A DNA stretch of 63,318 nt, filler included, from Octopus bimaculoides (taxonomy: Eukaryota), in NCBI RefSeq assembly GCF_001194135.2. It is 5 parts of 5 records of this genome, joined end to end, with 100 filler letters (N's around TTAATTAATTAA, not from the genome) between each part and the next. Parts side by side here need not be neighbours in the genome. Positions count along the whole stretch, not along the records: positions 43,502 to 60,654 come from NC_069000.1; 4 more parts are not named here. The stretch is one strand, 5' to 3'. The notes below the pieces were generated by a model that worked only from the letters and a program-made list of their open reading frames with translations, was not told the DNA's origin and searched no databases. Of this stretch, positions 20,420 to 60,654 are shown one piece after another. Every line of letters starts with the position of its first letter. The first letter of the stretch is position 1. Position numbers and translations under genes: made by a program.

Positions 20420-20451
<32 letters not shown>

Positions 20452-20704: not shown

Positions 20705-20772
<68 letters not shown>

Positions 20773-20959
20773 TACTCTCCACACCAAAGTTAGCAACATT
20801 GTCAGAGCCAAAAGCCATGTGTCTTGTGTCTATTCAAAACCGAAACAACAAATAAATAAATGCAGGAATCGATACTCGCCGCGTTTCTCCCATTCCTGGC
20901 TGCAGTCGTCACCGCAGTTGTTCTTATTGTTCTTATTGTTGTTGTCATCGTTATTTTAT

Positions 20960-21290: not shown

Positions 21291-21321
<31 letters not shown>

Positions 21322-39962: not shown

Positions 39963-40265
39963 TGTGTGTGTGTGTGTGTGCGTGTGTATGTATATTTACA
40001 TACAAACATATATACTAAACTTAAACTAGCTTATATTTCTTCTTAACGTTCCCTACATATGCGTTCGTGTACGAGTGATATTTTCTCAGTTCACTTTGGA
40101 TTGCCTTGATAACGCTGTGTTAACATGTCTTTTCTGATATATTAATTTGACTGACATTTTCTCCGTCTAAATATGTTGATAAAACAGAAACGGTTGCCGG
40201 CATTGCATGGTTAAATCATTAATTAAAGATGTGATTTCCTCCATTCGCATTCTTGGTGCTATATT

Positions 40266-43501: not shown

Positions 43502-44112
43502 TACTAACGGACTCATCGTTTTAGATCATTGTTACGCGGCGGAGTGTTCTGAAGTTTTGCATCCCTACATACATACATACATACATATTTACATACATAC
43601 ATACATACGTACATACATCTTTTAGAGGCAAAGATAATTTTAATAAACCAAGAATGTATGTATATGAATTACCCGAGAAAGCTTTTGCAAAATTACCTGG
43701 CAAGACAAGGTGACAGACACGGAGGTCTTCTCTCGAGCCGATCAGGAGGATCACCAAACGTTTGGCAAAATTTGATGCAGATGTCTGCTTGACTTTCTCT
43801 GTCATTGTCAATGTGACGATCACACGCTACACACCTTCCTTCCAAGCACTGCTGTAAATAGCAGAAGTGTGGTAGAACGTTAAAACTTAGTGCGCATGCA
43901 CAGCAGAGTTGGAGGAAATCTGTGCCAAGCGTATTTGCTCTGCTTGCTTTGGCTTCGTTATTATGGCAACAATGCCCATACTTATTGATCAGACCACGTA
44001 TATGCGTATGTGTGCGCACATGTGTTTTTATATGTATATATGACGTGGAAAATCCATATATATTGTTACCAGGTATATGTGTGTGCGTGTGTGAGTGTAA
44101 TACCTAGAGAGA

Positions 44113-44145
<33 letters not shown>

Positions 44146-44576
44146 AAAGAGTAATGAAGTGAATTTGAATTTTACGTAAGGATTTAAATATTACTCAGAC
44201 ATTTCCCAAGTAATTTTCGGAGTGATTGTAAAAAGGAAAAAAATTGGTGTTTCATTGTGTCCTAAATGACGACAGCAATACTGTTGTGTCGACGCCCCCA
44301 GGCGAAGAAGTAGGATCTCCTAAGACATATAAATAGAGGTAGTTCGGCCGTGGTAGGTGTGTTGAGTAGCAGTCGAGTAGCGATTGTATAGCGGTTGAGT
44401 AGAGGTCATCCGAAGGTGCTAGATAGCAGTAGGGTTGAGGCATAACAAATACACATATAACAATAAACATTTAAAAAGAGCATTACAAAACACTATGCAA
44501 AGTTTATTTGAGCACAATGCAATCCATATTCAAATTAACATCCATTTTCTCCTACTTTTTCATGGCCATCATTGTA

Positions 44577-44745
44577 TTCTTCTTCTTCTTCTTCTTCTTC
44601 TTCTTCTTCTTCTTCTTCTTCTTCTTCTTCTTCTTCTTCTTCTTCCACCTCCTCTTCCTGCTCCCCTCTTCTTCTTCTTCTTCTTCTTCTTCTTCTTCTT
44701 CTTCTTCTTCTTCTTCTTCTTCTTCTTCTTCTTCTTCTTCTTCTC
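44577..44745. repeat. (TCT)n microsatellite
   Basis: Directly visible, about 80 bp upstream of the Ig exon acceptor. Confidence 0.95.
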
Positions 44746-44825
44746 AAGTTGTTCTGTAAATGCAGTTATGTTTTAACAACAAACACTTCCTCTGATTTAT
44801 TCTTTTTTTTCTTTTTTCTACACAG

Positions 44826-45131
44826 TTGTTGATATCGATATATACCCTACTGAGGGTATTGATTTTGGTCTAATAACTATAATATGTAGGTATGATGAGC
44901 AAAATATCACTGAGCTTTCTCTGGTGCAAAATCAAAACCATACCATTGTGAATTTTAAATACAAAGAGAATGGTGTCAATGAGAAAACAATCGAGCAGAA
45001 CAATTTCAAGTGTTCAATTCAACCTGATATAGATGAGGTTGTCTGCTTGAAGTTGCCAGGCTCTTGCGAGGATGTGGCAAACTACACATGTGAAACACCT
45101 TTAGAATCTTCAGAACCTAAACCCCTGACAG
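44826..45131 (+). CDS. Internal coding exon: V-like immunoglobulin domain
   Basis: Polypyrimidine tract + cacag acceptor; 306 nt open; G|gtcagt donor; phase 1-1. VDIDIYPTEGIDFGLITIICRYDEQNITELSLVQNQNHTIVNFKY..FKCSIQPDIDEVVCLKLPGSCEDVANYTCETPLESSEPKPLT: B-strand Cys, D-x-A-x-Y-x-C F-strand motif, three N-glycosylation sequons. Confidence 0.8.
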
Positions 45132-45304
45132 GTCAGTGTTACCAGTTTTATTTGTTTTCACTTATTAAGCCCCAATATCATTAATTTTATCCCTATTGCG
45201 TGTTTCTACTGCACTATCGGGAACACATTTGTAGCATTTGATATATGCAATATTTTACTCTGGTTTTGTATTTTCTATTGCAGAAATAATCTACTTATTG
45301 GGTA

Positions 45305-46030
45305 CAGTAACAGTTGTACACTTTACTCGTTTTACAAATCAATTTTCCCCATTGAAATTAACTGCACTATAATTAATCCGTTCCAGGCTCCCCAAACCAT
45401 CCAAAAACAATTTATTTTTTTATGAGTTTTAAGACAGAAAAGGTGTAGTTACAATTAAAATGACAATTATAAAAAAGAGAATGTAAAAGAAATATATAAA
45501 CAGGTTTTATTAGCTGAATTATCTTAAAAATGGGACGATATGTGCGCGAGGAAGACGATAGAGAGGGGAGGAGAATTACTGTTCGGAAGGAGAATCTCCT
45601 TCCATTAAGACTTCATAAGGAACGACCTCTGGCATTTCCTGTTTCACTTTGCCAAATTTAGTCTTTTGGGACACACTTTCTTCACTTTTTACACTTGCAG
45701 GTTACTTCATTAGAAACATATCAAGAGAAGTTTGCTTTTTCCTGCCTCTCAAAATGTTACGAAAATGCGCCAGAGCAGTGTCATTAAATAAAGCAGTTGC
45801 ATGACCTGCAGATACTTTTTCAGGATGATATTTTTCTACAAATTCAATAAAATACTGCCACATTGCCAACACTGCATTTATGCCACTCGTAGTGATAACA
45901 TTCCCTGCTACACTGTCTTCCCCCGAGGAACCAATCCTTTCCACCGCATCCAAATGCTGTTGCTCCTGAATCTACAGGAGTTCATCTATCGTCAGGTCCT
46001 CTGAGTGTTCTCGACAAGATCATTTATTGG
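45305..46030 (-). mobile_element. Tigger/pogo-like transposon 3' fragment in the Ig gene intron
   Basis: EHSEDLTIDELL and MWQYFIEFVEKYHPEKVSAGHATALFNDTALAHFRNILRGRKKQTSLD match the Tigger-type transposase C-terminus; TA|CAGT terminus at about 45303. Confidence 0.8.
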
Positions 46031-46494
46031 AAGGTCGTGATCCAACTCAAATAAACATTAACAGCTGTGTGACGTGAGGGGTAAGGGGACATGAAAGTGT
46101 CACCTCTGGAGTTTGCCAACTGATTCCTATGCCGATAGGTAACTGAACAGAAATTGGCAATCTATAAGTCTCTTTGAATGACCAATCACTTATCTGGAAA
46201 GGCCTTGAAATCAATGTTACCATCTGGGGACTGTCTCTGACCCAGTGATAATAAAAAGCCTCAACGGAGGTCTACAACCAAATAACTTTACTCAAAATGA
46301 CACTTTGCAACAAAGCCAGTGGAGGCAAAGATGCCTCTCCCTTACTTGACAATTTATGCACCACATTGCAGAAATCACAATCTAAGTATATCTCAAAGCA
46401 AAGTCGTACACCATTGAATTACAAATAACGCTCATCTTTTATCCTCGGGTGTCTTTACAGCTTCCAAGACTACAACTGTATTCATCTTAGCTTA

Positions 46495-47153
46495 GGAAAA
46501 ATGACTAAATTATGGGAGTTAAGCCTCCATTAATGGGTCTTATTAATCTCCTAAGAAGTTGAAATTTTAGGAACACTACTTCATTTGTGTCTAATATCTA
46601 TGGTTAAATTTTCATCAACAGTAAAAATATATGAATATTTATGAGGGTTATAGCCTCACTTAAAACCCCTCACTTTCAAACTTATACTATTTTACATATA
46701 CCCTTATGCATAGAATATAATCTCCAAATTTTATAAAGACCCATACAGTACTTCTGACCTTGTTTTGGATCATGAATAATGACTAGAATTTGGGAGTTAA
46801 GGCCCCCATTATGGGGTCTTAGAATCCTCATGTGAAGCAGAAACTTTGGGAATACTTCTTGATTTGAAATTACATCAACATCAGAAATTTATGAATTTTC
46901 ATGGGAGGTTGTGCACCCTTTAAGTCCCACAAATTAAAACCAAACATACTGCATTATACCTGCCCTTATGCATTGAATCTATGTTCTAAATATCCTAAGG
47001 ATCCATCAGGTAATTTTGGTCCATAAAAAATGACAAAAATTTGGTGGTTAAGCCCCCATTAGGGGGGGGGGTCTTAGAATAATCCAAAGAAATGGAAATT
47101 TTGGGTATATTTTAAAATTTATTTCTAATACTTAGGGGTCAAATTTCATCAAA
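46495..47153. repeat. Diverged tandem repeat, ~250-280 bp unit, at least 2.5 copies
   Basis: aatgac.a.aatt..gg.gttaag.c.ccatt..ggg.tctta at about 46498, 46778 and 47027; cccttatgcat.gaat twice; runs into an N gap. Confidence 0.75.
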
Positions 47154-48006
47154 ANNNNNNNNNNNNNNNNNNNNNNNNNNNNNNNNNNNNNNNNNNNNNN
47201 NNNNNNNNNNNNNNNNNNNNNNNNNNNNNNNNNNNNNNNNNNNNNNNNNNNNNNNNNNNNNNNNNNNNNNNNNNNNNNNNNNNNNNNNNNNNNNNNNNNN
47301 NNNNNNNNNNNNNNNNNNNNNNNNNNNNNNNNNNNNNNNNNNNNNNNNNNNNNNNNNNNNNNNNNNNNNNNNNNNNNNNNNNNNNNNNNNNNNNNNNNNN
47401 NNNNNNNNNNNNNNNNNNNNNNNNNNNNNNNNNNNNNNNNNNNNNNNNNNNNNNNNNNNNNNNNNNNNNNNNNNNNNNNNNNNNNNNNNNNNNNNNNNNN
47501 NNNNNNNNNNNNNNNNNNNNNNNNNNNNNNNNNNNNNNNNNNNNNNNNNNNNNNNNNNNNNNNNNNNNNNNNNNNNNNNNNNNNNNNNNNNNNNNNNNNN
47601 NNNNNNNNNNNNNNNNNNNNNNNNNNNNNNNNNNNNNNNNNNNNNNNNNNNNNNNNNNNNNNNNNNNNNNNNNNNNNNNNNNNNNNNNNNNNNNNNNNNN
47701 NNNNNNNNNNNNNNNNNNNNNNNNNNNNNNNNNNNNNNNNNNNNNNNNNNNNNNNNNNNNNNNNNNNNNNNNNNNNNNNNNNNNNNNNNNNNNNNNNNNN
47801 NNNNNNNNNNNNNNNNNNNNNNNNNNNNNNNNNNNNNNNNNNNNNNNNNNNNNNNNNNNNNNNNNNNNNNNNNNNNNNNNNNNNNNNNNNNNNNNNNNNN
47901 NNNNNNNNNNNNNNNNNNNNNNNNNNNNNNNNNNNNNNNNNNNNNNNNNNNNNNNNNNNNNNNNNNNNNNNNNNNNNNNNNNNNNNNNNNNNNNNNNNNN
48001 NNNNNN

Positions 48007-48052
<46 letters not shown>

Positions 48053-48352
48053 GAATATATGTATATATCTTTATATAAGTATAAATTTGTATGAATGTAT
48101 TATTCATGTGCTTGTATGGTTATTGCTATTGACTCGGCTCCACAATGCTCTACCACCGCCTTTATTAAAAAGTTATACAGTTGAACACTTAGAAGCAGTA
48201 TTTCAAAGAGCTTAGCATCACAGATAGTTTGAGTGTTGTTATACACTTTGGTTGAGTATGAAGATTGTAGTTTATATCAGTGAAACCACTCAATATATTA
48301 TTGTAGTTCTATTATCCTAAAATTAACAAATGTTAATTTGTTTACTTTTCAG

Positions 48353-48655
48353 TAAGATCTTACATGATGAATCTGGAACTTCTTAACCCACCCTTTGAAG
48401 TAAACAAGCTATCGATATTCAAATGTACAGCAAAGGTTGGTTCACCTTTTGGTCATCAAGCCTTTCTTTGGGTTGAAGACAGTCATCGTGGCAAAATTAC
48501 AAATGAAGATTATGTGAATGTTTTAACTAATGACAAATGTTATGTTGTAGCAGAGTCAATTTTTGAGTACACTGTAAACAAGGACGACATTGACGTCACA
48601 ACCATCTCATGTGCAGTGTTCGGTGAAACACTTAATATACCAATCATCTCCACTG
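48353..48655 (+). CDS. Coding exon: C2-set (CD80/nectin-like) immunoglobulin domain
   Basis: tttacttttcag acceptor; 303 nt; G|gtgagc donor; phase 1-1 and in frame with the 44826 exon. ..PFEVNKLSIFKCTAKVGSPFGHQAFLW..KCYVVAESIFEYTVNKDDIDVTTISCAVFGETL: Cys, W, S-x-F-x-Y-x-V..DD..C pattern. Confidence 0.82.
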
Positions 48656-50929
48656 GTGAGCAAATGCCCTTTATGCTACTTTGGTTTGCGTTTTTACTTT
48701 TTCTGTTAATGTTGCTGTGGCTATCTAACCTCAGATCTTTACTAATAGAAGTTGGAGATTTTGAAAGACTTATCTATGTAAGAAGTACCGTATCTGCAGT
48801 AAAGGACGATGTCACCATTATAGTATAGGATACAAAGACAAACCAAAAATGGTCTATTCCCCATCGACTAGGTGATTAGATTTCGAAGGCTTTGGTTCGA
48901 TTTCGATTTCCAGATTGATTGAGAAGTATTTGCGAGGTAAATGGCCTGACTCTTTCAGAAATTCACTGTGTGAAAGCAGTCCTTGTAAGGTTGAAAGGAG
49001 CGGGGTTAATACTTTAGCGTGATTGTGATGCATCTAATGAAGAATCGACAATAGAGAACATGTGCTTCGTGTTCAATTCTTAAAATCACATTAAATTGAA
49101 CATAATATTTCATTTTATTTATTTAACCAGGAACAGCTGTTATATAACACCAACATAATGTATAATTGGGGAGGGCAGATTAAGTTAAAGAAACAAGAGA
49201 ATGAGATTTACCGACATAAATCCGTGGTGTTTCCCATTGTTGTTAATATTTGAAGATAGAGAAAACGACATATCCTCTTGTAGAATCTGATGTCTGTCCA
49301 TTTATTTATGTTTGTTCGCCTTTAATATTTCGTCGGTAAAGTTTTAAAACATTCTATAAGTCATTTGGCAAGATTTTAACTCACCAATCGATCTGATTGG
49401 CTGAGCCACAATCGCTTGGGTTTGTTTATGACAACCATGGTAAAAAGCCGGGAAATATGAATGCGATGGTTCAAAACAGCTGTAATCTCGCTACAATGTC
49501 CATATTGCCTGACTGATGTACTTTGCCATAGAAAACATCTAATCAGAGTGAAGTGTTTGTGTTTTTGCTTTCGAAGGGACAGGTTCCGCAGACAAAGAAA
49601 CTCACGACACACTACCACTTGAACCTCAGTGGAACGTCAAACTTCTGTCTGTTCCTGAGTAAGACTGGCTACAGTGCTCGTTACCTCCTTACACTTTTGA
49701 TCGACTTGGTTGATGGGATCAAACCAGGCACCGAGTTCTTCAACTGGTCCGTCATTTCAGAACGATCAGAGGCACACAAAAGTTGTCAATGTAGGTAGTG
49801 AAGTCTACTATCGTTGCTGACTCATTACACTCACCGAAAGATCAAGCAAAGAAATGCCGGACAGCTGCCTGTATCATGTATCACTATAGTATCTGATACG
49901 ACATGCTAGTCTCAGTCCGCCAGTGATTAGATTGTGGGTTTTTCTGTTACATCCTATTTTCACTGTTTGACTCTATCGGACAGCCTTCGATTCTTCCTTT
50001 TTTTTTAGCACACGAACACAACTTTGTCAATACAGCTTCCATATTTCATGAATAGAAATAAATGAGTGCCATTCCTGGTGCTAGCCTGTAACTTTAGCCT
50101 CTTCTAGATTACTCACTAGAGCTTATCTCAATTTATTCTTCTCTGTCATTACTGCTTTACTAAACGTTAACGATACTCATCCAACTTAACTCTTCGGAGT
50201 GTTTCACCAGGAGTTGCTGACAATTATTTCCATTAAGTATCGCTAAGCCGAATCCTGTAGTTTTGCGAGCTGATAAGCGTACATTCAGCTTCCTCTAACC
50301 GAGTCTCTCTTTACAGATCTAATCTAAATCGATCGACATCTTAGGGTAAATTTGGAAATGGCACTCGCTATGTTTTTCGAGAAGGGCCCTCTTGTTAAAT
50401 GAGGAAAAAAACAATGAAAAACCTTTCTAAGCTTCTCTTGATCAGTTTCTTCCTGAAACCCTGATTTTTATAGAATAAAGTTTTAGGTCACTACATGTGC
50501 TTGTGCCAGTTTAAATAAATAGTAGTTTTCGAAAGATATTCATCGAATCCCCACCTTTGCAAGAACGATTTCGCTTCCTATGGACAACACCGCCGCCACT
50601 ATAAGCAGTGTTGATGAGGAGGGGCTTGGGGTTCGGCGTCAGTGTTTTTCTCTGTGTTTAATTGTTATTGTTGATAACCCTGTTTTGACTTTTGTTTTCG
50701 TGTTGCTGGTAGTGGAGTTTCTAACCCACCATTGCTCCTGTTGATGAAATTACTGTTGTTCTTGGTGTAGTTGTTGTTATGGTTGTGGTGCTGGCAGCAG
50801 TGCGAACCCCACTCTTGCTTCTATTTGTTGAGAGTAGAAGATTTCTGAGTAGTTGTTGTTACACACATGTGTGAGGTATTTAGTACTTCTGCATTCAAGC
50901 ATAACCTGCAGATGAGACCCATCTATTTT

Positions 50930-51050
50930 TACTTATATAAGCAAACGAGCACGTCCCTCGCAGGATCAATCGATATCGTATACATAGCACCAACATCGCC
51001 TTTGATCCACAACCTATCATCTCTGATATATACCTAGAATTAAGACACTT
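50930..51050 (-). mobile_element. Possible Penelope RT motif remnant
   Basis: DDRLWIKGDVGAMYT resembles the PLE RT D-V-x-x-(L/M)-Y-T motif; short and flanked by stops. Confidence 0.3.
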
Positions 51051-51991
51051 CGGACAAGGCTCACATTTAGTTGACATAAAAAAACTGCTTCCTGTTAGAG
51101 TCATGCATCCTCAAATACATTCCATTTTTGTGGGTTGAATAAAATGTACCTGCAATGGAATGGCCCCGTACAAACACAGAAAATCTTTTCAAATAAATCG
51201 TTATTAAAGATTTATACAAAGCAACGAAATAAAACTTATTGATTGAATTTCAGTTCAAGATCGAAATTTGATTGTACCTTTCGATTGTAGCTCNNNNNNN
51301 NNNNNNNNNNNNNNNNNNNNNNNNNNNNNNNNNNNNNNNNNNNNNNNNNNNNNNNNNNNNNNNNNNNNNNNNNNNNNNNNNNNNNNNNNNNNNNNNNNNN
51401 NNNNNNNNNNNNNNNNNNNNNNNNNNNNNNNNNNNNNNNNNNNNNNNNNNNNNNNNNNNNNNNNNNNNNNNNNNNNNNNNNNNNNNNNNNNNNNNNNNNN
51501 NNNNNNNNNNNNNNNNNNNNNNNNNNNNNNNNNNNNNNNNNNNNNNNNNNNNNNNNNNNNNNNNNNNNNNNNNNNNNNNNNNNNNNNNNNNNNNNNNNNN
51601 NNNNNNNNNNNNNNNNNNNNNNNNNNNNNNNNNNNNNNNNNNNNNNNNNNNNNNNNNNNNNNNNNNNNNNNNNNNNNNNNNNNNNNNNNNNNNNNNNNNN
51701 NNNNNNNNNNNNNNNNNNNNNNNNNNNNNNNNNNNNNNNNNNNNNNNNNNNNNNNNNNNNNNNNNNNNNNNNNNNNNNNNNNNNNNNNNNNNNNNNNNNN
51801 NNNNNNNNNNNNNNNNNNNNNNNNNNNNNNNNNNNNNNNNNNNNNNNNNNNNNNNNNNNNNNNNNNNNNNNNNNNNNNNNNNNNNNNNNNNNNNNNNNNN
51901 NNNNNNNNNNNNNNNNNNNNNNNNNNNNNNNNNNNNNNNNNNNNNNNNNNNNNNNNNNNNNNNNNNNNNNNNNNNNNNNNNNNNNNNNNNN

Positions 51992-52029
<38 letters not shown>

Positions 52030-52459
52030 TAGTATCATATTAACGATAATAACATATCCACTCCATTACCCAATATACAACTCCCTATATTTCTGACTCA
52101 CGGATATTTAGACGACAATGTGTTTCTGCTTAAGAGCGTCTGATGTGGATTGTTACGCACGTTTTTAGTATTATTATAGTCCGTCTAACGGCTGAAGTCA
52201 TCTGAACTTCTTCTAGGTTTAATTTACTGACCAGTTTTTGTTTCAATCTCTCTAGGTTTAATTTCATTCTCTCACACTACACAGCTCTTCAACACAGCCC
52301 TCACAATTCTCCACTGTAATCATTGAATCAACCCCTTCTTCGACGCCAGTCTTACATCTAAGTGACAAGTTTCACGGACTTGCAATATTCAGTAAGTTAT
52401 ATGTTTGTAGCGTGTCCTGTTTATGGTCGCCGATACAAAGAACCAAGAAAATACTGGAC

Positions 52460-52566
52460 CGACTTACCCTAAAATAATCAACCTCTCACAACGGAATCTT
52501 ATGGAAAGGGAAATAAAAATTCTACAATATGGTCTAAAATTCTCTCCAACACAACGGACTTTATAA
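52460..52566 (+). mobile_element. Penelope-like ORF N-terminal fragment
   Basis: PKIINLSQRNLMEREIKILQYGLKFSPT matches the PLE IINLS..L...E..LL..GLKF.PT signature. Confidence 0.7.
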
Positions 52567-52954
52567 AAGATACCTATTTTACTATCAGGCGCTCACAGCC
52601 CTCTGTCAGCCAGATAATTTGGTCTGTGTATGTTACAGCAAGACATTCTATAGAAAATTAGTGGTCCGTAAAAGTGACAACGACCTCAAGGAAATTCTGG
52701 GTGCCGATGATGACCAACTGGCTCGTCTTTTCCGAAGCTGGGTTCTATGAATAATTAATAGAAATCCCTTGCCTAGCAGTGCAAAAGAATGACTTTGGTG
52801 AACAGGGTGACTCGGGATGTGTGGAGATTCCGAATTATTCCTGGGTCGCATTTCCCTTTTATTGTGGAATTTTGTTCTGATTTTCTTGATAATGTTTATT
52901 TATTGTTTATACGTGTTTATATAAATCCCTAATATCCTTAATTTTTTTTTCTGA

Positions 52955-53165
52955 GGCGGCGAGCTGGCAAAATCGTTGGAGGCTGGAAAAAATGTTTGGA
53001 GGCATTTTGTGTGGCTTTACTTCCTGAGTTCAAATTCCGCCGAAATTGACTTTGTTATCCATTCTTTCTGAATCAATAAAATAAGTACCAATCAATTACT
53101 GGAGTCGAACTATTCGATTTTCCCATCTTCTGAAATTTCTGACATTATACCAAATTTAGGAAGGA
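52955..53165 (+). mobile_element. SINE family A (OK-like), decayed
   Basis: ggcggcgagctggcaaaatcgt..ctgagttcaaattccgccga..gactttg..aataagtacca. Confidence 0.75.
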
Positions 53166-53425
53166 ATATTATATCTTTTTTCCTCTATTACAGATAAATT
53201 GAATGGTGCGGATATGATTACTAAAATTTTAACTTTTGCCGCAATCCTGCTTTTTATGGGCAATTTTCCTTAAGGGTCGTGCAAAAAAGAAAACAAAAAA
53301 TAACAGAAACAACTCGGTTAGTATCATATATACTCTTGACCCTCGTCTGCGTGTGTATAAATCATGATGTATCTATGCACGTTGACACGTGTGGGTACAT
53401 ACATAATACATACATACATACATAC

Positions 53426-53461
<36 letters not shown>

Positions 53462-54234
53462 NNNNNNNNNNNNNNNNNNNNNNNNNNNNNNNNNNNNNNN
53501 NNNNNNNNNNNNNNNNNNNNNNNNNNNNNNNNNNNNNNNNNNNNNNNNNNNNNNNNNNNNNNNNNNNNNNNNNNNNNNNNNNNNNNNNNNNNNNNNNNNN
53601 NNNNNNNNNNNNNNNNNNNNNNNNNNNNNNNNNNNNNNNNNNNNNNNNNNNNNNNNNNNNNNNNNNNNNNNNNNNNNNNNNNNNNNNNNNNNNNNNNNNN
53701 NNNNNNNNNNNNNNNNNNNNNNNNNNNNNNNNNNNNNNNNNNNNNNNNNNNNNNNNNNNNNNNNNNNNNNNNNNNNNNNNNNNNNNNNNNNNNNNNNNNN
53801 NNNNNNNNNNNNNNNNNNNNNNNNNNNNNNNNNNNNNNNNNNNNNNNNNNNNNNNNNNNNNNNNNNNNNNNNNNNNNNNNNNNNNNNNNNNNNNNNNNNN
53901 NNNNNNNNNNNNNNNNNNNNNNNNNNNNNNNNNNNNNNNNNNNNNNNNNNNNNNNNNNNACCCATCCATCCATCCATCCATCCATGCATACATAGAAACA
54001 TACATACATACTTACAAAGCTACCGACCCACATACCTGCGTACCTACCTACTTACCTACAAATCTATCTATCTACCTTCCTACAAACCTACCAACATACC
54101 TACCTACCTTCCTATACACACTCACACATTCATGCATACATACACACACATACAAACATGCATACATACATACATACATACGTACATCTGGGCATACACT
54201 AACACAAAATACTGCACACACACACATATGCACA

Positions 54235-54340
54235 AATACCTAGTTGATGTTGATAGAAGTTCCAATAAAGGAGCCTTGAATCTATGTTAGAGTCCGGCTC
54301 TTTCTCTATGGACAAGAAATACAGAAATGAAACTGATTGA
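54235..54340 (+). mobile_element. R4/Dong-like LINE 3' UTR remnant
   Basis: Homologous to 17590-17700. Confidence 0.7.
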
Positions 54341-56171
54341 TAACATACATATATATCGTTTCTCTCTAAATTGACAAAACTTTATTTTTTTCAGCTTACT
54401 GCCTGATTCAGCGAATCTTTCAAGTAACAGCCAACTCACGTTTACCCCGGAAATAAATATTTGACGCTACACTATACATTGAGTGCTTTTTCCAGTTACC
54501 GCTCGTTGTTTTCTGATGCTGAAAATATTATATGAATATGTGTGATTGTATGTGTGCGATATATATATGCGTGTACATACGTGCCCATACATATGCATCT
54601 AAATAGATATAATAAAACAAATTTTCACCTATAAGTACATAGTCTCTATCTTTTTTCCAACTAGAATCTACTTTTCCTAAATTAGGGAAAGCATTGTAGG
54701 CATGGTGTAGCAAAACTAGAAAGTTATATGAAAATGTCGTTTAAATTCTTCGCAAAGTTTAGCCTATCAGTCACAATAGAAACGAATTACAGATCTGCTC
54801 CTTTTCTACATGTTCCTGGCTGAAATGTTAGATTATATGCTCCTTACCATAAACCAAACGAGAATCTTAGGAACGTTAAAACATACTCAAATTATCCCTC
54901 TGCAATTATAACCTCTATAGTTAATAGCGTTTCGTATAGAATGCCGAGATAGCCATTCATGTAGCGTGGCGCCAATTCATAACAGCTGGCAATATGACTG
55001 CTGAGGAAATATGATTGTCGTTTTCCTATTGGTTGAAAACTGCTCATATTTGAATTCTGAAAATTAGTAAAAGAATATTTTTATGCAATTTCAATTCTTA
55101 AAAGTCAAGTTGAGAAGTTATAGAAACCCTGGATTTTGGGGAAAACTTTAGTGTCTGTGGTTGTCTAAATGAATCCACGTCACTCAAATCCAGAGTAATG
55201 GTTATTGCCATGAGAAATACTCTTTAAAAGTCCGACACCTATTTTGGTTGTCGTATTTCATTAGCTAGAAAAATGATATACATATAAATGTATATAAATA
55301 AACTATATTTCTTCGCAACCTGTTTAACATATTTAATTCTGTTTAATAATCTGTAACGTTTTGTTTTTATAGCGGTACGTAATAAGGACACGATTTTCAA
55401 TATACATTTGCATAAGACGTATAGGTGTAAATTAGCGTCTGTACAAGACTTACGCTAACATGGCGTACATTTTAACTTGAGAGATAATACTTATTGATAT
55501 CCTTTACAAGTTAAGGATCAGCTTTATCAATATCAACTTCCACTCAAGACAATTAAAATATACACTCGTAAATGAGTATAAAATAAGCAGCCTTAAAATA
55601 ACGATTATTTTAACTGCTATAACTGTTGTAGAAAAACTGGTGACTACCAATAAAACTGTTATAAAACTTTTTTTTGAAGGTTTAAGAGAAGATTTTAATG
55701 ATATGTCAACATGTATGTCTGTGTGTGTGAGTGCGACATAGAAACATAATAGACAGGCCGTCATGTAAACAAAGTGTATGTGTATACAAACATGGATTTA
55801 TGTGTGTGCGAGAAATACAGAGCATAGAAAAGAGTCTTAGAAAAGGACGTTAGAAGAAAGTCCAGACACAAGGATGATAAATACCAGTTCATATTCAAGG
55901 TATACAGTGGTTGAGGTGCTGTAACAAGAACTTGAGGCCTCGTAGCAGAGCTGGAGGAGAGGCACATGTCGTGAGAGGTTGTGGCTTCAATGCTGCTGCC
56001 GGTTACTTGGTACAAGAGTTCTTACAGGTTGTATTCGCTGTTAACCATGGTGAAGTAATTCACAAAGTGTTGTGATAGAACCTGTGCGAGTGCTGTTGGT
56101 AGTGTGCACGTAGAGAGGTTGGTGTAGACGCTAAGAAGCTGGAGGCGACGAAGGTGGAGTCTGTCGTAAGC

Positions 56172-56455
56172 TGACATTCCAAAGACTGGGGCAGTTTGAA
56201 TGGGAAACGATGCCCCACCCAATATATTCGCCGGACATGGCCCATCTGCTTATCATTTATTCCGTGGTCTTTCAAGATCGTTTAGACGGAAAAAATATGA
56301 ATTCTGTAGATGAGGTCAGAACAGTACTGGGGGAGTATTTTCCGTCACAGACAGGTGACTTTTAGAAGAGGGGCCTTGCAAGCCCACCAGATAGATGGAA
56401 GAGAATTGTAGAAAATGAAGGAGAGTATATTTTAGATTAAAAAATAACTTTATCT
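56172..56455 (+). mobile_element. Mariner 3' fragment (same family as 10349-11244)
   Basis: FQRLGQFEWETMPHP..YSPD..HLF..LDGKNMNSVDEV..DRW..IVENEGEYILD*; reverse-complement match to 10380-10630. Confidence 0.85.
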
Positions 56456-58393
56456 TACATTTACACACACATACACACACGCACACACGCACTCACACGC
56501 GCACTCACACACACCCACATATCTATACATATACATATATGCTGGAGGACTTAGAAATTTCTGGTTTGGTGACCGAGTGCGCAGGTAGATTACCAGGGTA
56601 AGTTGAAATCTAAACCGTGGCGAAGAGAACTGACATACGAGATGAAGACCTCTAACAGAAAATCCTGAGATATGTCGTTCGTGGAATCTGTGGAAAATAT
56701 TTGCAACAACTTTCTGCTATTAGTATTTTCAAATAGGCTGGCTGTACTACACGCCCTTCGCCACTTAAAACCATCTGGCTATCATATTCACTAATAATAC
56801 ATTACATATACACGACGAAATGACGGTAGAATCTGCTTTTTCGCTTTTTCACTCTCACCGTCTTTCTCTCCTTCTGCGTGCGCGCGTACACACACACACA
56901 CAATATATATTGTAGCCCACTGTGCCGATTTCCTTAATGTGCTTGTACACCCAATCCAATGTAGAGTAGTTCAGTAGATAAAATTCGTCCACCAAGCATC
57001 TAAAATGAGTGGCAGCAGTTTGAACATATGCAGGATGGGACAGACAACAGCTAAATGTGTGGCTGATAATCGAATAAAAGCAATCACAGCACTCAACGTT
57101 GCCTATGGATTTGCCAGGTGAAGCTTCATCGATGTTAGGTAACCCTGGGTTACCAAATACAATTGTTACAGGAACTGGGAATGCAGTACAAAGGATCCAG
57201 TGAAGAAGAACAGCAACCCATTAAGATATTCTTAGGAAGAATGTCATGGAATTCGTAGAGAAAGGGGCCAGAGTAATACAGCTTTCGTTTCCGACCTATT
57301 TAACTCTACCAAGAAGCTGCTCGTGATGTGGGTTTCTCGAATGCTTGGTGGGTGAAGTATATACTTTTTATTCTCGACTGCCTGGGTGACCCTGCAGTAA
57401 AAAAGGAGCATGGACAAGGTATAAACCTGATAAACCTTACATCGCCAACGATTGAGTTTTACATGAAGCAATTGAGCATGAAGAAAGTTCAGGATGTTGT
57501 TAAGGCAGTAAGTTTAGCCTCTGCTACCGGGGCTCTTTGCAGTAGCCTACTGAAAGCCAATAAGGAAAAATATNNNNNNNNNNNNNNNNNNNNNNNNNNN
57601 NNNNNNNNNNNNNNNNNNNNNNNNNNNNNNNNNNNNNNNNNNNNNNNNNNNNNNNNNNNNNNNNNNNNNNNNNNNNNNNNNNNNNNNNNNNNNNNNNNNN
57701 NNNNNNNNNNNNNNNNNNNNNNNNNNNNNNNNNNNNNNNNNNNNNNNNNNNNNNNNNNNNNNNNNNNNNNNNNNNNNNNNNNNNNNNNNNNNNNNNNNNN
57801 NNNNNNNNNNNNNNNNNNNNNNNNNNNNNNNNNNNNNNNNNNNNNNNNNNNNNNNNNNNNNNNNNNNNNNNNNNNNNNNNNNNNNNNNNNNNNNNNNNNN
57901 NNNNNNNNNNNNNNNNNNNNNNNNNNNNNNNNNNNNNNNNNNNNNNNNNNNNNNNNNNNNNNNNNNNNNNNNNNNNNNNNNNNNNNNNNNNNNNNNNNNN
58001 NNNNNNNNNNNNNNNNNNNNNNNNNNNNNNNNNNNNNNNNNNNNNNNNNNNNNNNNNNNNNNNNNNNNNNNNTATATATATATATATATATATATATTCT
58101 ACCTGTCTACTTCTCGAAGCCGAAAGAGAGCGAGTAAGAGAGAAAGAGAGAGAGAGAGAAAGAGAAAGAAGGAGAAAGTAAGAGAAAATGAAACAATGTC
58201 AGCTTCACTCACACTTCGAATTGCACTCCCTCTCTCATTCACACTTACATATATTGTACTTTTGTCTCTGTTTTTGCTGTTTGACTATTTCGACTTCACA
58301 TTTCGAATCAGACACGTCTTTTCGTTGATTTGTGTTGCTGGGAGCCGAAGATCATTTCCCTTTCTGCTTAATACCTACCTGTTAAGATCAGGG

Positions 58394-58442
58394 ATGTTAT
58401 TAGTTATATTGATATTGATGGTGGTTTCTTACAATTCAGCCC
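58394..58442 (+). CDS. Candidate signal-peptide exon (MLLVILILMVVSYNSA, phase-1 donor)
   Basis: ATG, 11 hydrophobic residues, S-x-A end, then a strong C|gtaagt donor in phase 1, which would fit a following Ig exon. No downstream exon was identified. Confidence 0.35.
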
Positions 58443-58588
58443 GTAAGTTAAGATTCTAGAAAATATTTTCCTTTCAGCTCCGACACTCTACCTTTCTCTG
58501 TTAGATCTCATACTTACATTAATGGGTGCCTGTGCTTACTATATTGTTCTATCTCCCCCTATTTGCCCTTTTTCACTCGCATTTTCTT

Positions 58589-58636
<48 letters not shown>

Positions 58637-58914
58637 ATTAATGGGTCTCCGTTCATGACGAGGCAATCATCAAAGGGGACAACCAAGGCTGCTATTCTCG
58701 TATTGTTTCGTAAGAGATGTGATACTTTCTCCACAAGAAGCACTGTGCATACAAATATACATATATACGTGTTCGTGATTAATTTGGAGAATTTTTGTCT
58801 CATCTTTTCGGGAATTGCTTGATGTATTGGTGAACAGTTAATGGTATAGGAAAATATAAAGATGAAAATTCTGGTTGAGAAGAAGTTAGTTGACATGGTA
58901 GACTGAAGCCGTGT

Positions 58915-59720
58915 GAATACTGGAAAAGAGATGCCTGTATCATGTTGATTTGCGACGGGTATCAAAATGTCGACATCATGACTGCTATCAGTGCTTTGTG
59001 AACACTGTAAAGATTGTAAAACGTAACATGAATTTCATGAAAACCAAGTTCCCCCAAAATGTTATGGCTTTGGGTGTGTAAGGTTTTTGCATGTGCCTCC
59101 AGTGAGGGTGAACTCACTGAACTGAGCCTTAGGCCTTGAACTGATCCGTAGGTTTTGAACTGAACCTTGGGCTTTGAACTGAGCCCTAGGCTCAATTCAG
59201 ACGGTTAGGTGAAGCTGCTGGAGTTTGTTGTCAAACCGTGTCTGGAGAAGGTTGCTGCTGGAAGGCTATATGTATGGCAGCAGGATTCGGCTCTTTGTCA
59301 TACTTCCGGAAAAAGGTCAGAGGTGGTAGTCGGAGAATTTCTATGATTTCACCAGTCTCAGTTTCTGGCCTCTTAATTCTCCCAGTTGTAATCTCATGGA
59401 ATACTATGTGTGGGATATAGTTGAAAAAGAAATCAGCCGCTTTTACCTGCTGCGACGAGGCTGAGCGCGTGGTCAAGTTCGGAAAGATGTTCGAAGATCT
59501 TCCTAGGGACGCAGTGAGGAACGCATGCGCCACACCCCGGAGCCGTCGTGAGGTCGTGGTGGAAGCTGAAGCAGCTACCTTAATTAAACTGTTATCTCCC
59601 AGCCTTAGTCTAGTTGATATTTTCTGTTTTAAACTACATTTACTTTTGAAAACAATATTGTGTTTTCATTTTGTGCCAACTGTTAAGTTTATTCCAAACA
59701 GCCTAAAATGTATGTTTGTT
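58915..59720 (+). mobile_element. Internally deleted DD37D (maT-like) Tc1/mariner element
   Basis: MKTKFP.NVM.LGV; VWQQDSA.CHTSGK..W.SENFYDFTS..FWP.NSP.CN.M(E/D)YYVW with 37 residues after the second D once one frameshift is corrected. Confidence 0.7.
59119..59195. repeat. 19-bp minisatellite x4 (tgaactgagccttaggcct)
   Basis: Directly visible inside the DD37D element. Confidence 0.8.
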
Positions 59721-60100
59721 TGTGTGTGTGTGTGCATGTGTGCGTGCGTGTGTGTGGATATATATATATACACGCATATATTTTTATTAATATTTGGCAG
59801 AATTAACAGACTCAAGAGACGTGAGTTTCGTGCGTTGGCATTTATCAAATTGGATTGGTCACTCAGTTGCTTCTGCTAAATATTAATAAAAATACACAGA
59901 TACTCATATTTTGAGTTCTATTTTCCTGTTTGCAACAGCATACCTGTACATACATACATACATACATACAAACATACGTACATGCATACATACATACATA
60001 CATACGTACATACGTACGTACGTACGTACGTATGTATGTGTATGTATTTATATATATATATTTATATATATTTACATATATATATATGTATACAAATGAA

Positions 60101-60154
<54 letters not shown>

Positions 60155-60410
60155 ACTATGTTGTTTGCAGGTAGTAATTCAAATGAGATAGAAATATGTA
60201 GTTAATACGTATAGAAGAGTAAATATAAAATTATTAAAGTCGACTTCATATTTTTTCTAATTCATATTCCTTTCACTCAAGTAGCGTTCAACACGTCCAT
60301 TTCGAACGTAGAATATTTTTGACTTTACATGCTAACGGATTCATCGTTTTAGATCAGTGTTACGCGACGGAGTGTTCTGAAGCTTTGCATCCAAACATAC
60401 ATACATACAT

Positions 60411-60654
60411 AGCCCACAATGTGTTTGCAGTACCAGTACTCATACCGACATTCGGGATACTTGACTGGACGATCGATGAAATCCGAGCCTTTGATGTGAA
60501 GACCCGAAAAATACTAACGAGCACGAACAACTTTCACATCAATAGCGATGTAGACCGCCTATACCTAAAACGAAATAAAGGAGGGAGGGGCCTAACATCA
60601 ATTCAGACTGCCTTTGAATGCCGTGTCATATCTCTTCGACATCATCTCATAACC
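60411..60654 (+). mobile_element. 5'-truncated R4/Dong-like LINE (RT C-terminal region), truncated by the contig end
   Basis: AHNVFAVPVLIPTFGILDWTIDEIRAFDVKTRKILT..FHINSDVDRLYLKRNKGGRGL, uninterrupted; begins right after (CATA)4. Confidence 0.88.

What the first reader, a model, noticed from the sequence alone, without database searches (positions are those of the whole stretch)
44826..48828. Two-domain (V-like + C2) Ig-superfamily gene absent from the ORF track as such
Seen: two ~100-codon exons with canonical acceptors and donors, both phase 1-1 and in frame. They carry Ig motifs (B-strand Cys, D-x-A-x-Y-x-C; C..W..S-x-F..DD..C) and 8 Cys in total (5+3), more than the two canonical pairs. 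Established: symmetric phase-1 exons are typical of IgSF modules, and V+C2 is the nectin/CD80/Beat-type architecture. Inference: a divergent, probably lineage-specific cell-surface recognition protein (neural or immune), not an ortholog I recognise.
Basis: partly seen in the sequence, partly recalled or inferred. Interest (0 to 1): 0.7.

Follow-up and report, generated by a model that had tools for sequence, protein, structure and literature searches.

The report
Unannotated octopus two-Ig surface-protein gene
The two exons are real and encode a two-domain immunoglobulin-fold protein, probably lipid-anchored on the cell surface: an unannotated tandem copy in an uncharacterised family found so far only in octopods, whose exons differ about four times more than its introns.

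Summary
The window piece is Octopus bimaculoides chromosome CM046620.1. Exons 44826-45131 and 48353-48655 are open, phase 1-1 and bounded by canonical AG/GT sites. They match the annotated paralog LOC106880707 at 60% identity (E 4e-68), straight across the splice junction. The N gap lies in the intron, in repeat-rich sequence that the gapless O. sinensis ortholog lacks, so it hides no exon.

Pfam finds no Ig domain. AlphaFold2 on a 21-sequence family alignment gives pLDDT 92.5, and all top-50 Foldseek PDB hits are two-domain Ig proteins. Domain 1 has nine strands (V-like) and domain 2 has seven (C2-like).

The exons form copy 2 of a tandem array and lie inside the last intron of the LOC106880707 X1 model, which is probably chimeric. 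With its own signal-peptide exon and a GPI-signal-like tail exon (53194-53273), copy 2 predicts a roughly 245-aa anchored surface protein. The ORF stretch 48656-48828 is intron.

About 40 related protein clusters were found. Every one whose source I looked up is octopod.

Copy 1 and copy 2 exons differ by 20%, their flanking introns by 4-5%. Exon trees place the split before speciation, which suggests intron homogenisation with exon diversity retained. Function and expression are untested.

The parts
44826..45131 (+). Exon A: Ig domain 1 (V-like, 5 Cys, 3 N-glycosylation sequons), intron phase 1 on both sides
   Evidence: Open frame and AG/GT boundaries. 55-58% aa identity to LOC106880707 domain 1. 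AF2 predicts nine strands.
45132..48352 (+). Intron between the two Ig exons. It contains the assembly gap 47155-48006, degenerate repeats at 46496-47112 and (AT)n at 48007-48077.
   Evidence: Collinear with copy 1 and with the gapless O. sinensis locus, where there is no exon in the homologous interval.
48353..48655 (+). Exon B: Ig domain 2 (C2-like, 3 Cys, invariant Trp141), intron phase 1 on both sides
   Evidence: Open frame and AG/GT boundaries. 63% aa identity to LOC106880707 domain 2 and 67% to the O. sinensis ortholog of copy 1. AF2 predicts seven strands.
48656..48828 (+). Read-through ORF with a hydrophobic stretch, included in the finding's range. It is most likely intron, not coding.
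   Evidence: The donor GTGAGC is conserved in copy 1, copy 2 and O. sinensis. The read-through is frame-shifted between the copies after ...GDFER, carries a 27-nt indel, and stops after 9 codons in O. sinensis.
53194..53273 (+). Terminal exon encoding (D)KLNGADMITKILTFAAILLFMGNFP plus stop: a GPI-attachment-signal-like tail. It is annotated as the last exon of LOC106880707 isoform X1 but lies in copy 2's unit.
   Evidence: 100% match to the P0002 C-terminus. The acceptor ...ttacag| joins exon B in frame. The exon is intact in O. sinensis with an in-frame 3-nt deletion. The same tail type is seen in paralogs P0011, P0013, P0024, P0048 and P0049. Mean Kyte-Doolittle hydropathy is +1.87 for the last 15 residues.
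54395..54456 (+). Alternative terminal exon (E6'), encoding (A)YCLIQRIFQVTANSRLPRK plus stop. It would give an unanchored, secreted isoform.
   Evidence: Paralog of the isoform X2 terminal exon, 71% aa identity, within a 541-nt block 94.5% identical to copy 1. It has an acceptor and joins exon B in frame.
58394..58442 (+). Signal-peptide exon (MLLVILILMVVSYNSA, donor GTAAGT) of the next tandem unit (copy 3). It belongs to the cluster, not to this gene.
   Evidence: Copy 2's own signal-peptide exon (MLLVILILMMVPNNSA) is at L001 26442-26490, upstream of the piece.
44577..44744 (.). (TTC)55 microsatellite about 80 nt upstream of the exon A acceptor
   Evidence: Tandem Repeats Finder. The flank, 44459-44645, aligns with copy 1 at L001 14189-14392.

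Best explanation
The two exons are the Ig-domain exons of an unannotated gene, copy 2 of at least three head-to-tail units on Octopus bimaculoides chromosome CM046620.1.

Gene model. The parts are a signal-peptide exon (upstream of the piece), exon A (V-like Ig domain), exon B (C2-like Ig domain), and a short tail exon. The tail exon carries small residues (N-G-A), a short polar spacer and a 15-residue hydrophobic end. Shown: the exon structure, the homology, the predicted Ig fold and the family's distribution. Inferred: the precursor enters the ER, the tail is exchanged for a GPI anchor, and the mature protein of about 205 residues sits on the outer cell surface with the V-like domain distal. 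An alternative last exon would give a secreted form. The extra Cys pairs probably form C62-C73 within domain 1 and an interdomain C80-C164 bridge; this is inferred from the predicted strand positions only.

Evolution. The family behaves like a recognition-receptor cluster. Gene-wide dN/dS is about 1. The copy 1 and copy 2 exons diverged before the O. bimaculoides / O. vulgaris split. Their introns are nearly identical within O. bimaculoides. This pattern is best explained by gene conversion homogenising the repeat unit while the exons stay different.

Likely role. The most likely role is binding a ligand, either self or foreign, through the Ig ectodomain. Which ligand, and in which tissue, is unknown.
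For: Identity and locus:
- The piece is 100% identical to L001 30285-47437.

Homology across the splice junction:
- E 3.9e-68, 60% identity.

Exon map:
- The annotated neighbour's exons are mapped, and all internal exons are phase 1-1.
- Each unit has its own signal-peptide exon. In copy 2 there is an in-frame stop upstream of the ATG.
- Copy 1's contig ends about 20 nt before its own expected tail-exon acceptor, at an assembly gap. The tail exon at 53194-53273 therefore belongs positionally to copy 2.
- The tail exon is intact in O. sinensis and conserved among paralogs.

Fold:
- AF2 gives pLDDT 92.5.
- All top-50 Foldseek hits are two-domain Ig proteins.
- In a profile search of PDB sequences, nearly all of the 60 listed hits are Ig proteins, led by Fc-gamma-RII and Fab light chains at E about 0.006.

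Signs that copy 2 is functional:
- It keeps all 10 family-invariant and 7 near-invariant residues.
- Exon indels are all multiples of 3.
- The chance of staying stop-free after 90-123 neutral substitutions is 0.04-0.01.

Exon versus intron divergence:
- Exons differ at 123 of 606 sites and flanking introns at 53 of 1113 (Fisher p = 7e-23).
- Synonymous sites versus introns: p = 4e-7.
- Paralog introns differ by 4-5%, against 11-12% between O. bimaculoides and O. sinensis.
- Exon trees: copy 2 domain 1 groups with O. vulgaris units at 100% bootstrap, and copy 1 groups with its orthologs at 98% and 94%.
- Four-taxon site counts are 7:1:0 and 6:3:0.
- dN/dS is 0.9-1.5 in all comparisons.
Against: - There is no transcript evidence for copy 2.
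- dN/dS near 1 is also what a decaying duplicate would show.
- No counterparts of copy 1's two 39-nt linker exons were found in copy 2's assembled sequence.
- The GPI signal was judged by eye and by hydropathy, not with a dedicated predictor.
- Pfam Ig models do not reach threshold.
- Domain 1 lacks the canonical strand-C Trp, and copy 2 has Leu where nearly all other family members aligned have Trp in the C-W-K motif.
- The trees are NJ trees on about 100 residues, with few informative sites.
Confidence: 0.7

Rival explanations
1. Copy 2 is a transcriptionally silent or decaying duplicate, a young pseudogene. Its exons are still open by luck and its fast exon change reflects lost constraint.
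For: dN/dS is 1.0-1.5 against copy 1. There is no annotated model and no matching protein in the collection. Linker mini-exons were not found. The Trp of the C-W-K motif is replaced by Leu.
Against: Lost constraint cannot make exons diverge four times faster than the adjacent introns. All invariant Cys, Trp, Asp and Tyr positions are kept. Indels are in frame. The probability of staying stop-free is 0.01-0.04 under neutrality. Splice sites, the signal-peptide exon and the tail exon are intact. The clearly annotated orthologous pair, copy 1 versus O. sinensis, also shows dN/dS about 0.9-1.0, so a high ratio is a family trait.
Confidence: 0.15
2. The duplication is recent, after the split from O. 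sinensis and O. vulgaris, as the introns say. Copy 2's exons then changed extremely fast by positive selection or exon-targeted mutation. On this view the grouping with the O. vulgaris units is long-branch or convergent artefact.
For: Introns of the two copies differ by only 4-5%, less than half the between-species value. Copy 2's exon branch is about three times longer than copy 1's in three-point distances computed. Three of nine informative sites group the two O. bimaculoides copies in one comparison.
Against: Synonymous divergence in the exons (0.19-0.22) is also about four times the intron value, which selection on the protein does not explain. Copy 2 shares derived motifs with the O. vulgaris units (C-[LM]-K-L-P-x-S-C, N-[IV]-T-E-[LI]-S-L, KENGV), with 100% bootstrap. 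Domain 2 independently places copy 2 outside copy 1 plus its orthologs, at 94%.
Confidence: 0.2
3. The units are not separate genes but alternative cassettes of one transcription unit. Upstream Ig cassettes would be spliced to a shared downstream tail exon, as the isoform X1 model implies, in the manner of clustered protocadherin or UGT1A loci.
For: The RefSeq isoform X1 joins copy 1's exons to the tail exon at 53194-53273, skipping copy 2. All internal exons are phase 1-1, so any combination stays in frame.
Against: Copy 1's contig breaks about 20 nt before its own expected tail-exon acceptor. In the gapless O. sinensis locus a tail exon lies in the single unit sampled, about 9 kb downstream of its domain-2 exon. 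Each unit has its own ATG and signal-peptide exon and a conserved upstream region. Isoform X2 ends within copy 1's own unit.
Confidence: 0.05
4. Copies 1 and 2 are two very divergent alleles (haplotypes) of one gene that the gap-rich assembly placed in tandem.
For: The region is broken by 13 N gaps in 50 kb. A 244-nt stretch is 100% identical at two gap edges. Alleles of highly polymorphic immune genes do show divergent exons with similar introns.
Against: Non-coding divergence of 4-8% with many indels, and unit lengths of 16.2 versus 18.7 kb, are far beyond ordinary allelic difference. A third, different signal-peptide exon follows. One O. vulgaris gene model, from an independent assembly, carries both copy-1-type and copy-2-type domains on one strand.
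Confidence: 0.04

Closest known systems
Octopus bimaculoides LOC106880707 (XP_014786268/9) and its cluster neighbours LOC106880708, -713, -715, LOC128250265 and LOC128250267; O. sinensis LOC118766816; O. vulgaris CAI9737731, CAI9737736 and CAI9737738
   Same: True homologs, with E values from 1e-154 to 1e-10. They share the layout of signal peptide, Ig domain, Ig domain, linker and tail, the same eight Cys, and the same phase 1-1 exons. Members sit on the same chromosome record within O. bimaculoides (47.9 Mb) and within O. vulgaris (73.6 Mb).
   Different: The window gene is a separate copy, 60% identical to the nearest one. It is not annotated, and it lies inside the nearest one's last intron. 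None of these proteins has a described function, and none of six of their locus names occurs in the paper library.
Vertebrate V-C2 two-domain surface proteins of the CD2/CD48/CD58 and CD80/CD86 type, and CEACAMs (comparison from my own knowledge)
   Same: An N-terminal V-like domain plus a C2-like domain. Some of these are GPI-anchored (CD48, a CD58 isoform, several CEACAMs). They occur in tandem gene clusters and their sequences change fast. The predicted fold matches two-domain Ig proteins including CD4 D1D2 and BTN3A1.
   Different: No sequence relationship is detectable: the exhaustive HMMER search listed only uncharacterised family proteins plus two weak repeat-protein hits, and no vertebrate protein was recognised among them. 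This family has extra conserved Cys residues (C62, C73, C80, C164) and no strand-C Trp in domain 1. The resemblance is one of architecture, not of membership.
Drosophila Dpr and Beat two-Ig neuronal recognition proteins (from my own knowledge)
   Same: Two Ig domains, membrane tethering that is often through GPI, a multi-gene family, and a lineage-restricted expansion.
   Different: Dprs and Beats are conserved under purifying selection, whereas here dN/dS is about 1. No sequence homology was found.
MHC-type concerted evolution with selected exon diversity, e.g. badger MHC class I (PMC3434948)
   Same: Different parts of one gene tell different histories. Some regions are homogenised within a species, while selected coding regions keep older, trans-species lineages. 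Here, introns group by species and exons group by copy type.
   Different: The protein family, the phylum and presumably the ligand are all different. Here both Ig exons, rather than one binding domain, escape homogenisation. Conversion was inferred from divergence contrasts and was not tested with a recombination-detection method.
Gastropod FREPs, the fibrinogen-related proteins with IgSF domains (from my own knowledge)
   Same: Molluscan, with one or two N-terminal Ig-superfamily domains, a diversified multi-gene family, and an immune-recognition role.
   Different: FREPs are defined by a C-terminal fibrinogen domain, which is absent here. The predicted product ends in a 26-residue tail, and no fibrinogen Pfam hit appears in any of 21 members.

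Membership tests
Immunoglobulin superfamily (Ig-like beta-sandwich fold) | Two-sheet Greek-key beta-sandwich in each domain | tested here: met
   The AF2 model has pLDDT 92.5 and pTM 0.79 and is all-beta. Foldseek gives 1288 PDB matches at E<=1e-3, and all of the top 50 are two-domain Ig chains. This rests on a predicted structure, not a solved one.
Immunoglobulin superfamily (Ig-like beta-sandwich fold) | Cys in strand B and Cys in strand F, with D-x-x-x-Y-x-C before the latter | tested here: met
   C20...C80-E-D-V-A-N-Y-T-C88 in domain 1 and C126...C188 in domain 2. Both pairs are conserved across the family, and their positions fall in the predicted B and F strands.
Immunoglobulin superfamily (Ig-like beta-sandwich fold) | Core Trp in strand C | tested here: inconclusive
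   Domain 2 has the invariant W141, 15 residues after C126. Domain 1 has no Trp at the equivalent place in any member.
Immunoglobulin superfamily (Ig-like beta-sandwich fold) | Significant match to curated Ig sequence models (Pfam V-set, I-set, C2-set, Ig_2, Ig_3) | tested here: not met
   The window protein has no Ig family hit at E<=10. Among 21 family members there are only sub-threshold hits: Ig_2 in 3 members (best E 0.017), C2-set_2 in 1 (0.03) and Ig_3 in 1 (0.058). The family profile against PDB sequences gives Ig proteins at E about 0.006.
V-set Ig domain (domain 1) | Nine strands including C' and C'', and about 65-75 residues between the B and F Cys | tested here: inconclusive
   DSSP on the model gives nine strand segments in residues 2-101, and the Cys spacing is 68. 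There is no Pfam V-set hit.
C2-set Ig domain (domain 2) | Seven strands A-B-C-C'-E-F-G, with C' hairpinned to C and no D strand | tested here: inconclusive
   There are seven strand segments in residues 105-198, and strands 136-145 and 148-157 are joined by a two-residue turn. Sheet membership was not verifiable. The Cys spacing of 62 is long for a C2 domain.
GPI-anchored surface protein | Cleavable N-terminal signal peptide | tested here: met
   MLLVILILMMVPNNSA is encoded at L001 26442-26490 with donor GTAAGT, phase 1, and an in-frame stop upstream. The peptide is conserved in copies 1 and 3 and across the family. It was judged by eye, without a signal-peptide predictor.
GPI-anchored surface protein | C-terminal signal: small omega, omega+1 and omega+2 residues, a short polar spacer, then a hydrophobic end with no cytoplasmic tail | tested here: inconclusive
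   The tail is K-L-N-G-A-D-M-I-T-K followed by ILTFAAILLFMGNFP and a stop. Mean hydropathy is +1.87 for the last 15 residues. The same design is seen in paralogs. No GPI predictor was available.
GPI-anchored surface protein | Release from cells by PI-specific phospholipase C | not testable with these tools
   This needs an experiment.
Octopod two-Ig family (LOC106880707-like; unnamed) | Significant sequence homology over both domains, plus the conserved F-x-C, C-W-K, C-x-D-x-x-x-Y-x-C, K-S, F-x-C-x-A, W, C, S and C positions | tested here: met
   E 3.9e-68 to P0001. The window protein carries all 10 invariant and 7 near-invariant residues of the 21-member alignment. Its only departure from the C-W-K motif is W74 replaced by L.
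Gastropod FREP | C-terminal fibrinogen-related domain | tested here: not met
   No such domain is present in the predicted product or in any of 21 relatives.

The most novel reading that the evidence does not exclude
The cluster is an octopod-specific diversified recognition system of GPI-anchored two-Ig receptors. On this reading the exon sequences are actively kept different, or driven apart, while gene conversion homogenises the rest of each repeat unit. It would be the invertebrate counterpart of KIR, CEACAM or MHC-style evolution, serving immune or self/non-self recognition in an animal without antibodies.
Probability: 0.2. Interest if true: 0.7.

Novelty: new member of a known kind. Interest (0 to 1): 0.45.

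Why it matters
The result has three practical consequences.

- It adds a missing gene to the O. bimaculoides annotation.
- It flags a probably chimeric RefSeq model: LOC106880707 isoform X1 borrows the neighbour's last exon across an assembly gap.
- It shows that a group of "uncharacterized" octopus proteins is one family of signal-peptide-bearing, membrane-tethered two-Ig proteins that standard domain models miss.

The contrast between 20% exon divergence and 4-5% intron divergence, together with exon lineages older than the species, is the signature usually seen in immune or mating recognition genes. That gives a concrete, testable candidate locus for recognition biology in cephalopods, where little is known beyond protocadherins. 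If expression turns out to be absent, the locus is simply a decaying duplicate.

Tried and rejected
- Pfam on the exon products found no Ig hit, only noise (ZoocinA_TRD, Ependymin, SRA) at E 0.02-0.14.
- AF2 with a two-sequence alignment gave pLDDT 30 and was unusable. I repeated it with 21 sequences.
- The word-indexed homolog search found only one cluster, then two with a profile. The exhaustive HMMER search was needed to see the family.
- The idea that the read-through ORF to 48828 is a transmembrane tail was rejected. It is not conserved in frame between the copies and is stopped in O. sinensis.
- Copy 2 counterparts of the 39-nt linker exons were sought by blastn with word size 7 and by a pattern search. 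None was found in assembled sequence. They may lie in the gap 51294-51991 or be absent.
- The O. vulgaris locus returned no DNA because the gene range is too long.
- An exact-product look-up of the exon-B ORF found nothing on record.
- A test for amino-acid differences concentrating in loops rather than strands showed no enrichment (p = 0.66).
- Eight other ORFs in the piece gave no Pfam hit.
- Literature searches on six of the family's locus names and on octopus IgSF families found nothing on this family.
- High-copy TE fragment was rejected. The exons occur twice in the 50 kb of L001, and their relatives are a protein family with conserved Cys, a signal peptide and tails.

Full report
**Where the sequence comes from.** The piece 43502-60654 is 100% identical to L001 30285-47437, including the positions of the N gaps. 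L001 is Octopus bimaculoides chromosome CM046620.1:16172797-16222852, from assembly GCA_001194135.2. Window coordinate minus 13217 gives the L001 coordinate.

**The observation.** Exon A (44826-45131, 306 nt) and exon B (48353-48655, 303 nt) are open in the frame that begins at their third base, which is intron phase 1 on both sides. Each has a polypyrimidine tract plus CAG acceptor and a GT donor. Joined, they give 203 residues with eight Cys, split 5 + 3, and three N-x-[ST] sequons, all in domain 1. In the mechanical ORF list they appear only as truncated pieces. The spliced product matches one protein cluster in the 5.8-billion-cluster collection. That cluster is O. bimaculoides "uncharacterized protein LOC106880707" isoforms X1 and X2, at E 3.9e-68 and 60% identity, and the alignment runs through the exon junction without an indel. 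The exons are therefore real and correctly delimited at 44826, 45131 and 48353.

**The gap.** The N run 47155-48006 lies inside the intron. Sequence on both sides is collinear with the paralogous unit upstream: 44667-45463 matches L001 14325-15129, and 48020-49135 matches L001 15507-16576. It is also collinear with the gapless O. sinensis locus L002. There the homologous exons, 19044-19370 and 21553-21855, are separated by one continuous intron, and the O. bimaculoides flanks both abut position 21337. The gap therefore sits in about 1.6 kb of extra repeat-rich sequence (degenerate repeats at 46496-47112, (AT)n at 48007-48077) and hides no exon. Frame continuity across the intron follows from the phases and from the protein alignments.

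**The end of the finding.** The stated end, 48828, is the stop of an ORF that reads through the donor at 48655 into a T-rich, and so Phe/Leu-rich, stretch. This read-through is also open in copy 1. However, it carries a 27-nt indel and then a frameshift relative to copy 2, and in O. sinensis it stops after nine codons. The GTGAGC donor is conserved in all three. I treat 48656-48828 as intron.

**Gene context.** Mapping LOC106880707 onto L001 reproduces both isoforms exactly:

- first coding exon 10001-10253
- domain 1 exon 14482-14799
- domain 2 exon 15832-16134
- two 39-nt linker exons, 17350-17388 and 19672-19710
- a last exon at 22090-22151 (isoform X2) or 39977-40056 (isoform X1)

All internal exons are phase 1-1. 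The window's two exons (L001 31609-31914 and 35136-35438) therefore lie inside the last intron of the X1 model. They belong to a second, unannotated unit (copy 2).

Copy 2 has its own signal-peptide exon at L001 26442-26490. It encodes MLLVILILMMVPNNSA, has donor GTAAGT, and has an in-frame stop just upstream. A third unit starts at window 58394-58442. The stop upstream of copy 2's ATG also suggests that the first 68 residues of the annotated LOC106880707 proteins are translated 5'UTR.

**The X1 last exon.** This exon is window 53194-53273. In copy 1, sequence homologous to the 52 nt lying just upstream of this exon runs up to L001 20414, and the assembly breaks at 20419-21586. That break is about 20 nt before the point where copy 1's own acceptor would be. 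The gapless O. sinensis unit has its own intact tail exon, with an in-frame 3-nt deletion and a stop at the same place, about 9 kb downstream of its domain 2 exon.

I conclude that each unit has its own tail exon, that copy 1's is hidden in a gap, and that the X1 model is probably chimeric. The exon at 53194-53273 then belongs to copy 2. Exon B joins it in frame and gives ...IPIISTDKLNGADMITKILTFAAILLFMGNFP*. A second possible last exon, 54395-54456, is the paralog of the X2 terminal exon and would give a hydrophilic end.

**Fold.** Pfam finds no Ig domain in the window protein at E<=10. Among 21 family members it gives only sub-threshold Ig_2, C2-set_2 and Ig_3 hits. A family profile against PDB sequences gives 78 hits at E<=10. 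Nearly all of the 60 listed are Ig proteins, led by Fc-gamma-RII and Fab light chains at E about 0.006, and the best alignment covers an F-strand D-x-x-x-Y-x-C, the linker, and the next domain's B-strand Cys.

AF2 with two sequences failed, at pLDDT 30. With the 21-sequence alignment it gave pLDDT 92.5 and pTM 0.79. Foldseek against the PDB returned 1288 matches at E<=1e-3, and all of the top 50 are two-domain Ig chains: Fab heavy and light chains, scFv, CD4 D1D2 and BTN3A1.

DSSP on the model gives nine strand segments in domain 1, with a B-F Cys spacing of 68, which is V-like. It gives seven in domain 2, with a two-residue C-C' hairpin, which is C2-like. I could not inspect coordinates, so sheet pairing is unchecked. 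The proposed disulfides are inference from strand and loop positions: C20-C88 and C126-C188 as the canonical pairs, C62-C73 across the D-E hairpin, and C80-C164 between the domains.

**The family.** An exhaustive HMMER search of 1.84 billion representatives found 44 proteins at E<=1e-3, of which 35 are at <=1e-10. Two of the weakest are long non-family repeat proteins. Every member whose source I looked up is from O. bimaculoides, O. vulgaris, O. sinensis or Argonauta hians. That covers about 20 named clusters; three more come from unnamed Logan contigs. Many of the O. bimaculoides members lie on the same 47.9-Mb chromosome record, with neighbouring LOC numbers. UniProt labels several of them "Ig-like domain-containing protein". 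I did not look up the sources of the remaining clusters, so "octopod-only" is provisional.

The shared layout is a signal peptide (MLL..ILMMASY.SA), domain 1, domain 2, a variable or mucin-like linker, and one of three kinds of end. The first is the DKL.GAN.ITKIL.FA..L..G... tail seen here. The second is an ...SG..SKW.LV.NLILLL....SR tail. The third is a true transmembrane helix with a cytoplasmic tail. Membrane attachment is therefore a family trait.

The window protein keeps all ten invariant residues (F60, C62, C73, C80, D82, Y86, S104, C126, W141, C188) and all seven near-invariant ones. Its one notable change is Leu for the Trp of the C-W-K motif. The locus-name and keyword searches of the literature library found no paper that mentions these loci or describes the family.

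**Exon and intron histories disagree.**

| Comparison | Domain 1 exon | Domain 2 exon | Flanking introns |
|---|---|---|---|
| Copy 1 vs copy 2 (both O. bimaculoides) | 20.8% | 19.8% | 5.4% and 4.3% |
| Copy 1 vs O. sinensis ortholog of copy 1 | 13.5% | 9.2% | 11.5% and 12.3% |
| Copy 2 vs O. sinensis ortholog of copy 1 | 25.5% | 17.5% | 10.9% and 11.3% |

- Between copy 1 and copy 2, the flanking introns include 100-200-nt stretches that are 98-100% identical, and the change in mismatch density coincides with the exon borders.
- The exon-versus-intron contrast gives Fisher p = 7e-23.
- It is not only an amino-acid effect. Synonymous divergence is 0.19-0.22, against 0.05 in the introns (p = 4e-7).
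- So the two copies' introns are closer to each other than to O. sinensis (p = 5e-10), while copy 1's exons are closer to their O. sinensis ortholog than to copy 2.
- In NJ trees of protein domains, copy 2's domain 1 groups with two units of the O. vulgaris model CAI9737736 at 100% bootstrap. Copy 1 groups with its O. sinensis and O. vulgaris orthologs at 98%. In domain 2, copy 2 falls outside copy 1 plus its orthologs at 94%.
- Four-taxon informative sites favour this topology at 7:1:0 and 6:3:0. The minority sites form a species-specific patch: LVQNQNHT is shared by both O. bimaculoides copies, and NHNLT by the O. sinensis ortholog and one O. vulgaris unit.

The simplest reading is that the two exon lineages predate the species split. 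Gene conversion or unequal exchange has since homogenised the non-coding parts of the repeat unit, and patches of the exons, within O. bimaculoides. Most of the exon sequence has stayed different, either because selection favours different proteins or because its divergence blocks conversion. The same kind of region-by-region discordance is described for MHC genes (PMC3434948). The rival reading, a recent duplication followed by extreme exon acceleration, cannot be excluded with the data available.

**Is copy 2 functional?**

For function:
- Splice sites, the signal-peptide exon and the tail exon are intact.
- Exon indels are in frame.
- All structural key residues are retained.
- In simulation, the chance of remaining stop-free after 90-123 random substitutions is 0.04-0.01.
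- dN/dS near 1 is also seen between the annotated orthologs (0.87-1.01), so it is a family property rather than a sign of decay in this copy.

Against function:
- There is no transcript or protein evidence.
- No linker mini-exons were found.
- dN/dS is 1.0-1.5 against copy 1.
- Amino-acid differences are not concentrated in loops.

**Verdict.** The finding is a correct reading of a real gene: an unannotated tandem member of an uncharacterised two-Ig surface-protein family found so far only in octopods. I file it as a new member of a known kind, namely Ig-superfamily V-C2 surface proteins. It is not a homolog of the vertebrate or insect families with the same architecture, since no sequence link to them was found. 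The most interesting aspect is the exon-restricted divergence within a conversion-homogenised tandem array. This points to a recognition function under diversifying pressure, but that role and even expression remain untested.

Noticed in passing
window 53194-53273; L001 20363-20414 and gap 20419-21586: The RefSeq model LOC106880707 isoform X1 probably borrows its last exon from the neighbouring unit. Copy 1's contig ends about 20 nt before its own expected tail-exon acceptor, at an assembly gap.
   Followed up: yes
L001 10001-10204 (outside the piece); compare L001 26241-26441: The first 68 residues of the annotated LOC106880707 proteins (MENLSF...HTYIY...) look like translated 5'UTR or microsatellite. 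The same frame has stops in copy 2, and the conserved start in all three units is MLLVIL.
   Followed up: partly
L001 17230-17508 and 19551-19822 (outside the piece): Copy 1's two 39-nt linker exons and their flanks are tandem duplicates of each other (84-85% identical). No counterpart was found in copy 2's assembled sequence.
   Followed up: partly
window 58394-58442 (+): This is the signal-peptide exon (MLLVILILMVVSYNSA, donor GTAAGT) of a third tandem unit. Its Ig exons lie beyond the end of the piece and of L001.
   Followed up: partly
window 46496-47112 and 48007-48077: Degenerate repeats of a few hundred nt (two overlapping copies, 66% identical) and an (AT)n run flank the N gap. The whole block from about 46566 to 48139 is absent from the homologous O. 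sinensis intron.
   Followed up: partly
window 44577-44744: A (TTC)55 microsatellite lies about 80 nt upstream of the exon A acceptor. Its flank, 44459-44645, aligns with copy 1 at L001 14189-14392.
   Followed up: no
window 56135-56362 (+) and 60238-60654 (+): By eye these ORFs resemble a mariner-type transposase fragment (...HPIYSPDMAHL...) and the tail of a non-LTR reverse transcriptase. Neither gave a Pfam hit at E<=0.01, so this is unverified.
   Followed up: partly
window 57330-57573 versus L001 9200-9443: A 244-nt stretch is 100% identical between the regions upstream of the copy 3 and copy 1 signal-peptide exons. Both stretches abut assembly gaps. This is either very recent homogenisation or a gap-edge assembly artefact.
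   Followed up: no
window 44826-45131, residues 32-39 of the product: There is a species-specific patch inside exon A. Both O. bimaculoides copies read LVQNQNHT, whereas the O. sinensis ortholog of copy 1 and one O. vulgaris copy-2-like unit read NHNLT. This hints at gene conversion acting inside the exon as well.
   Followed up: partly
L002 34936-34998 (minus strand): In O. sinensis the next signal-peptide exon after copy 1 lies on the opposite strand. The arrangement of units therefore differs between the species.
   Followed up: no
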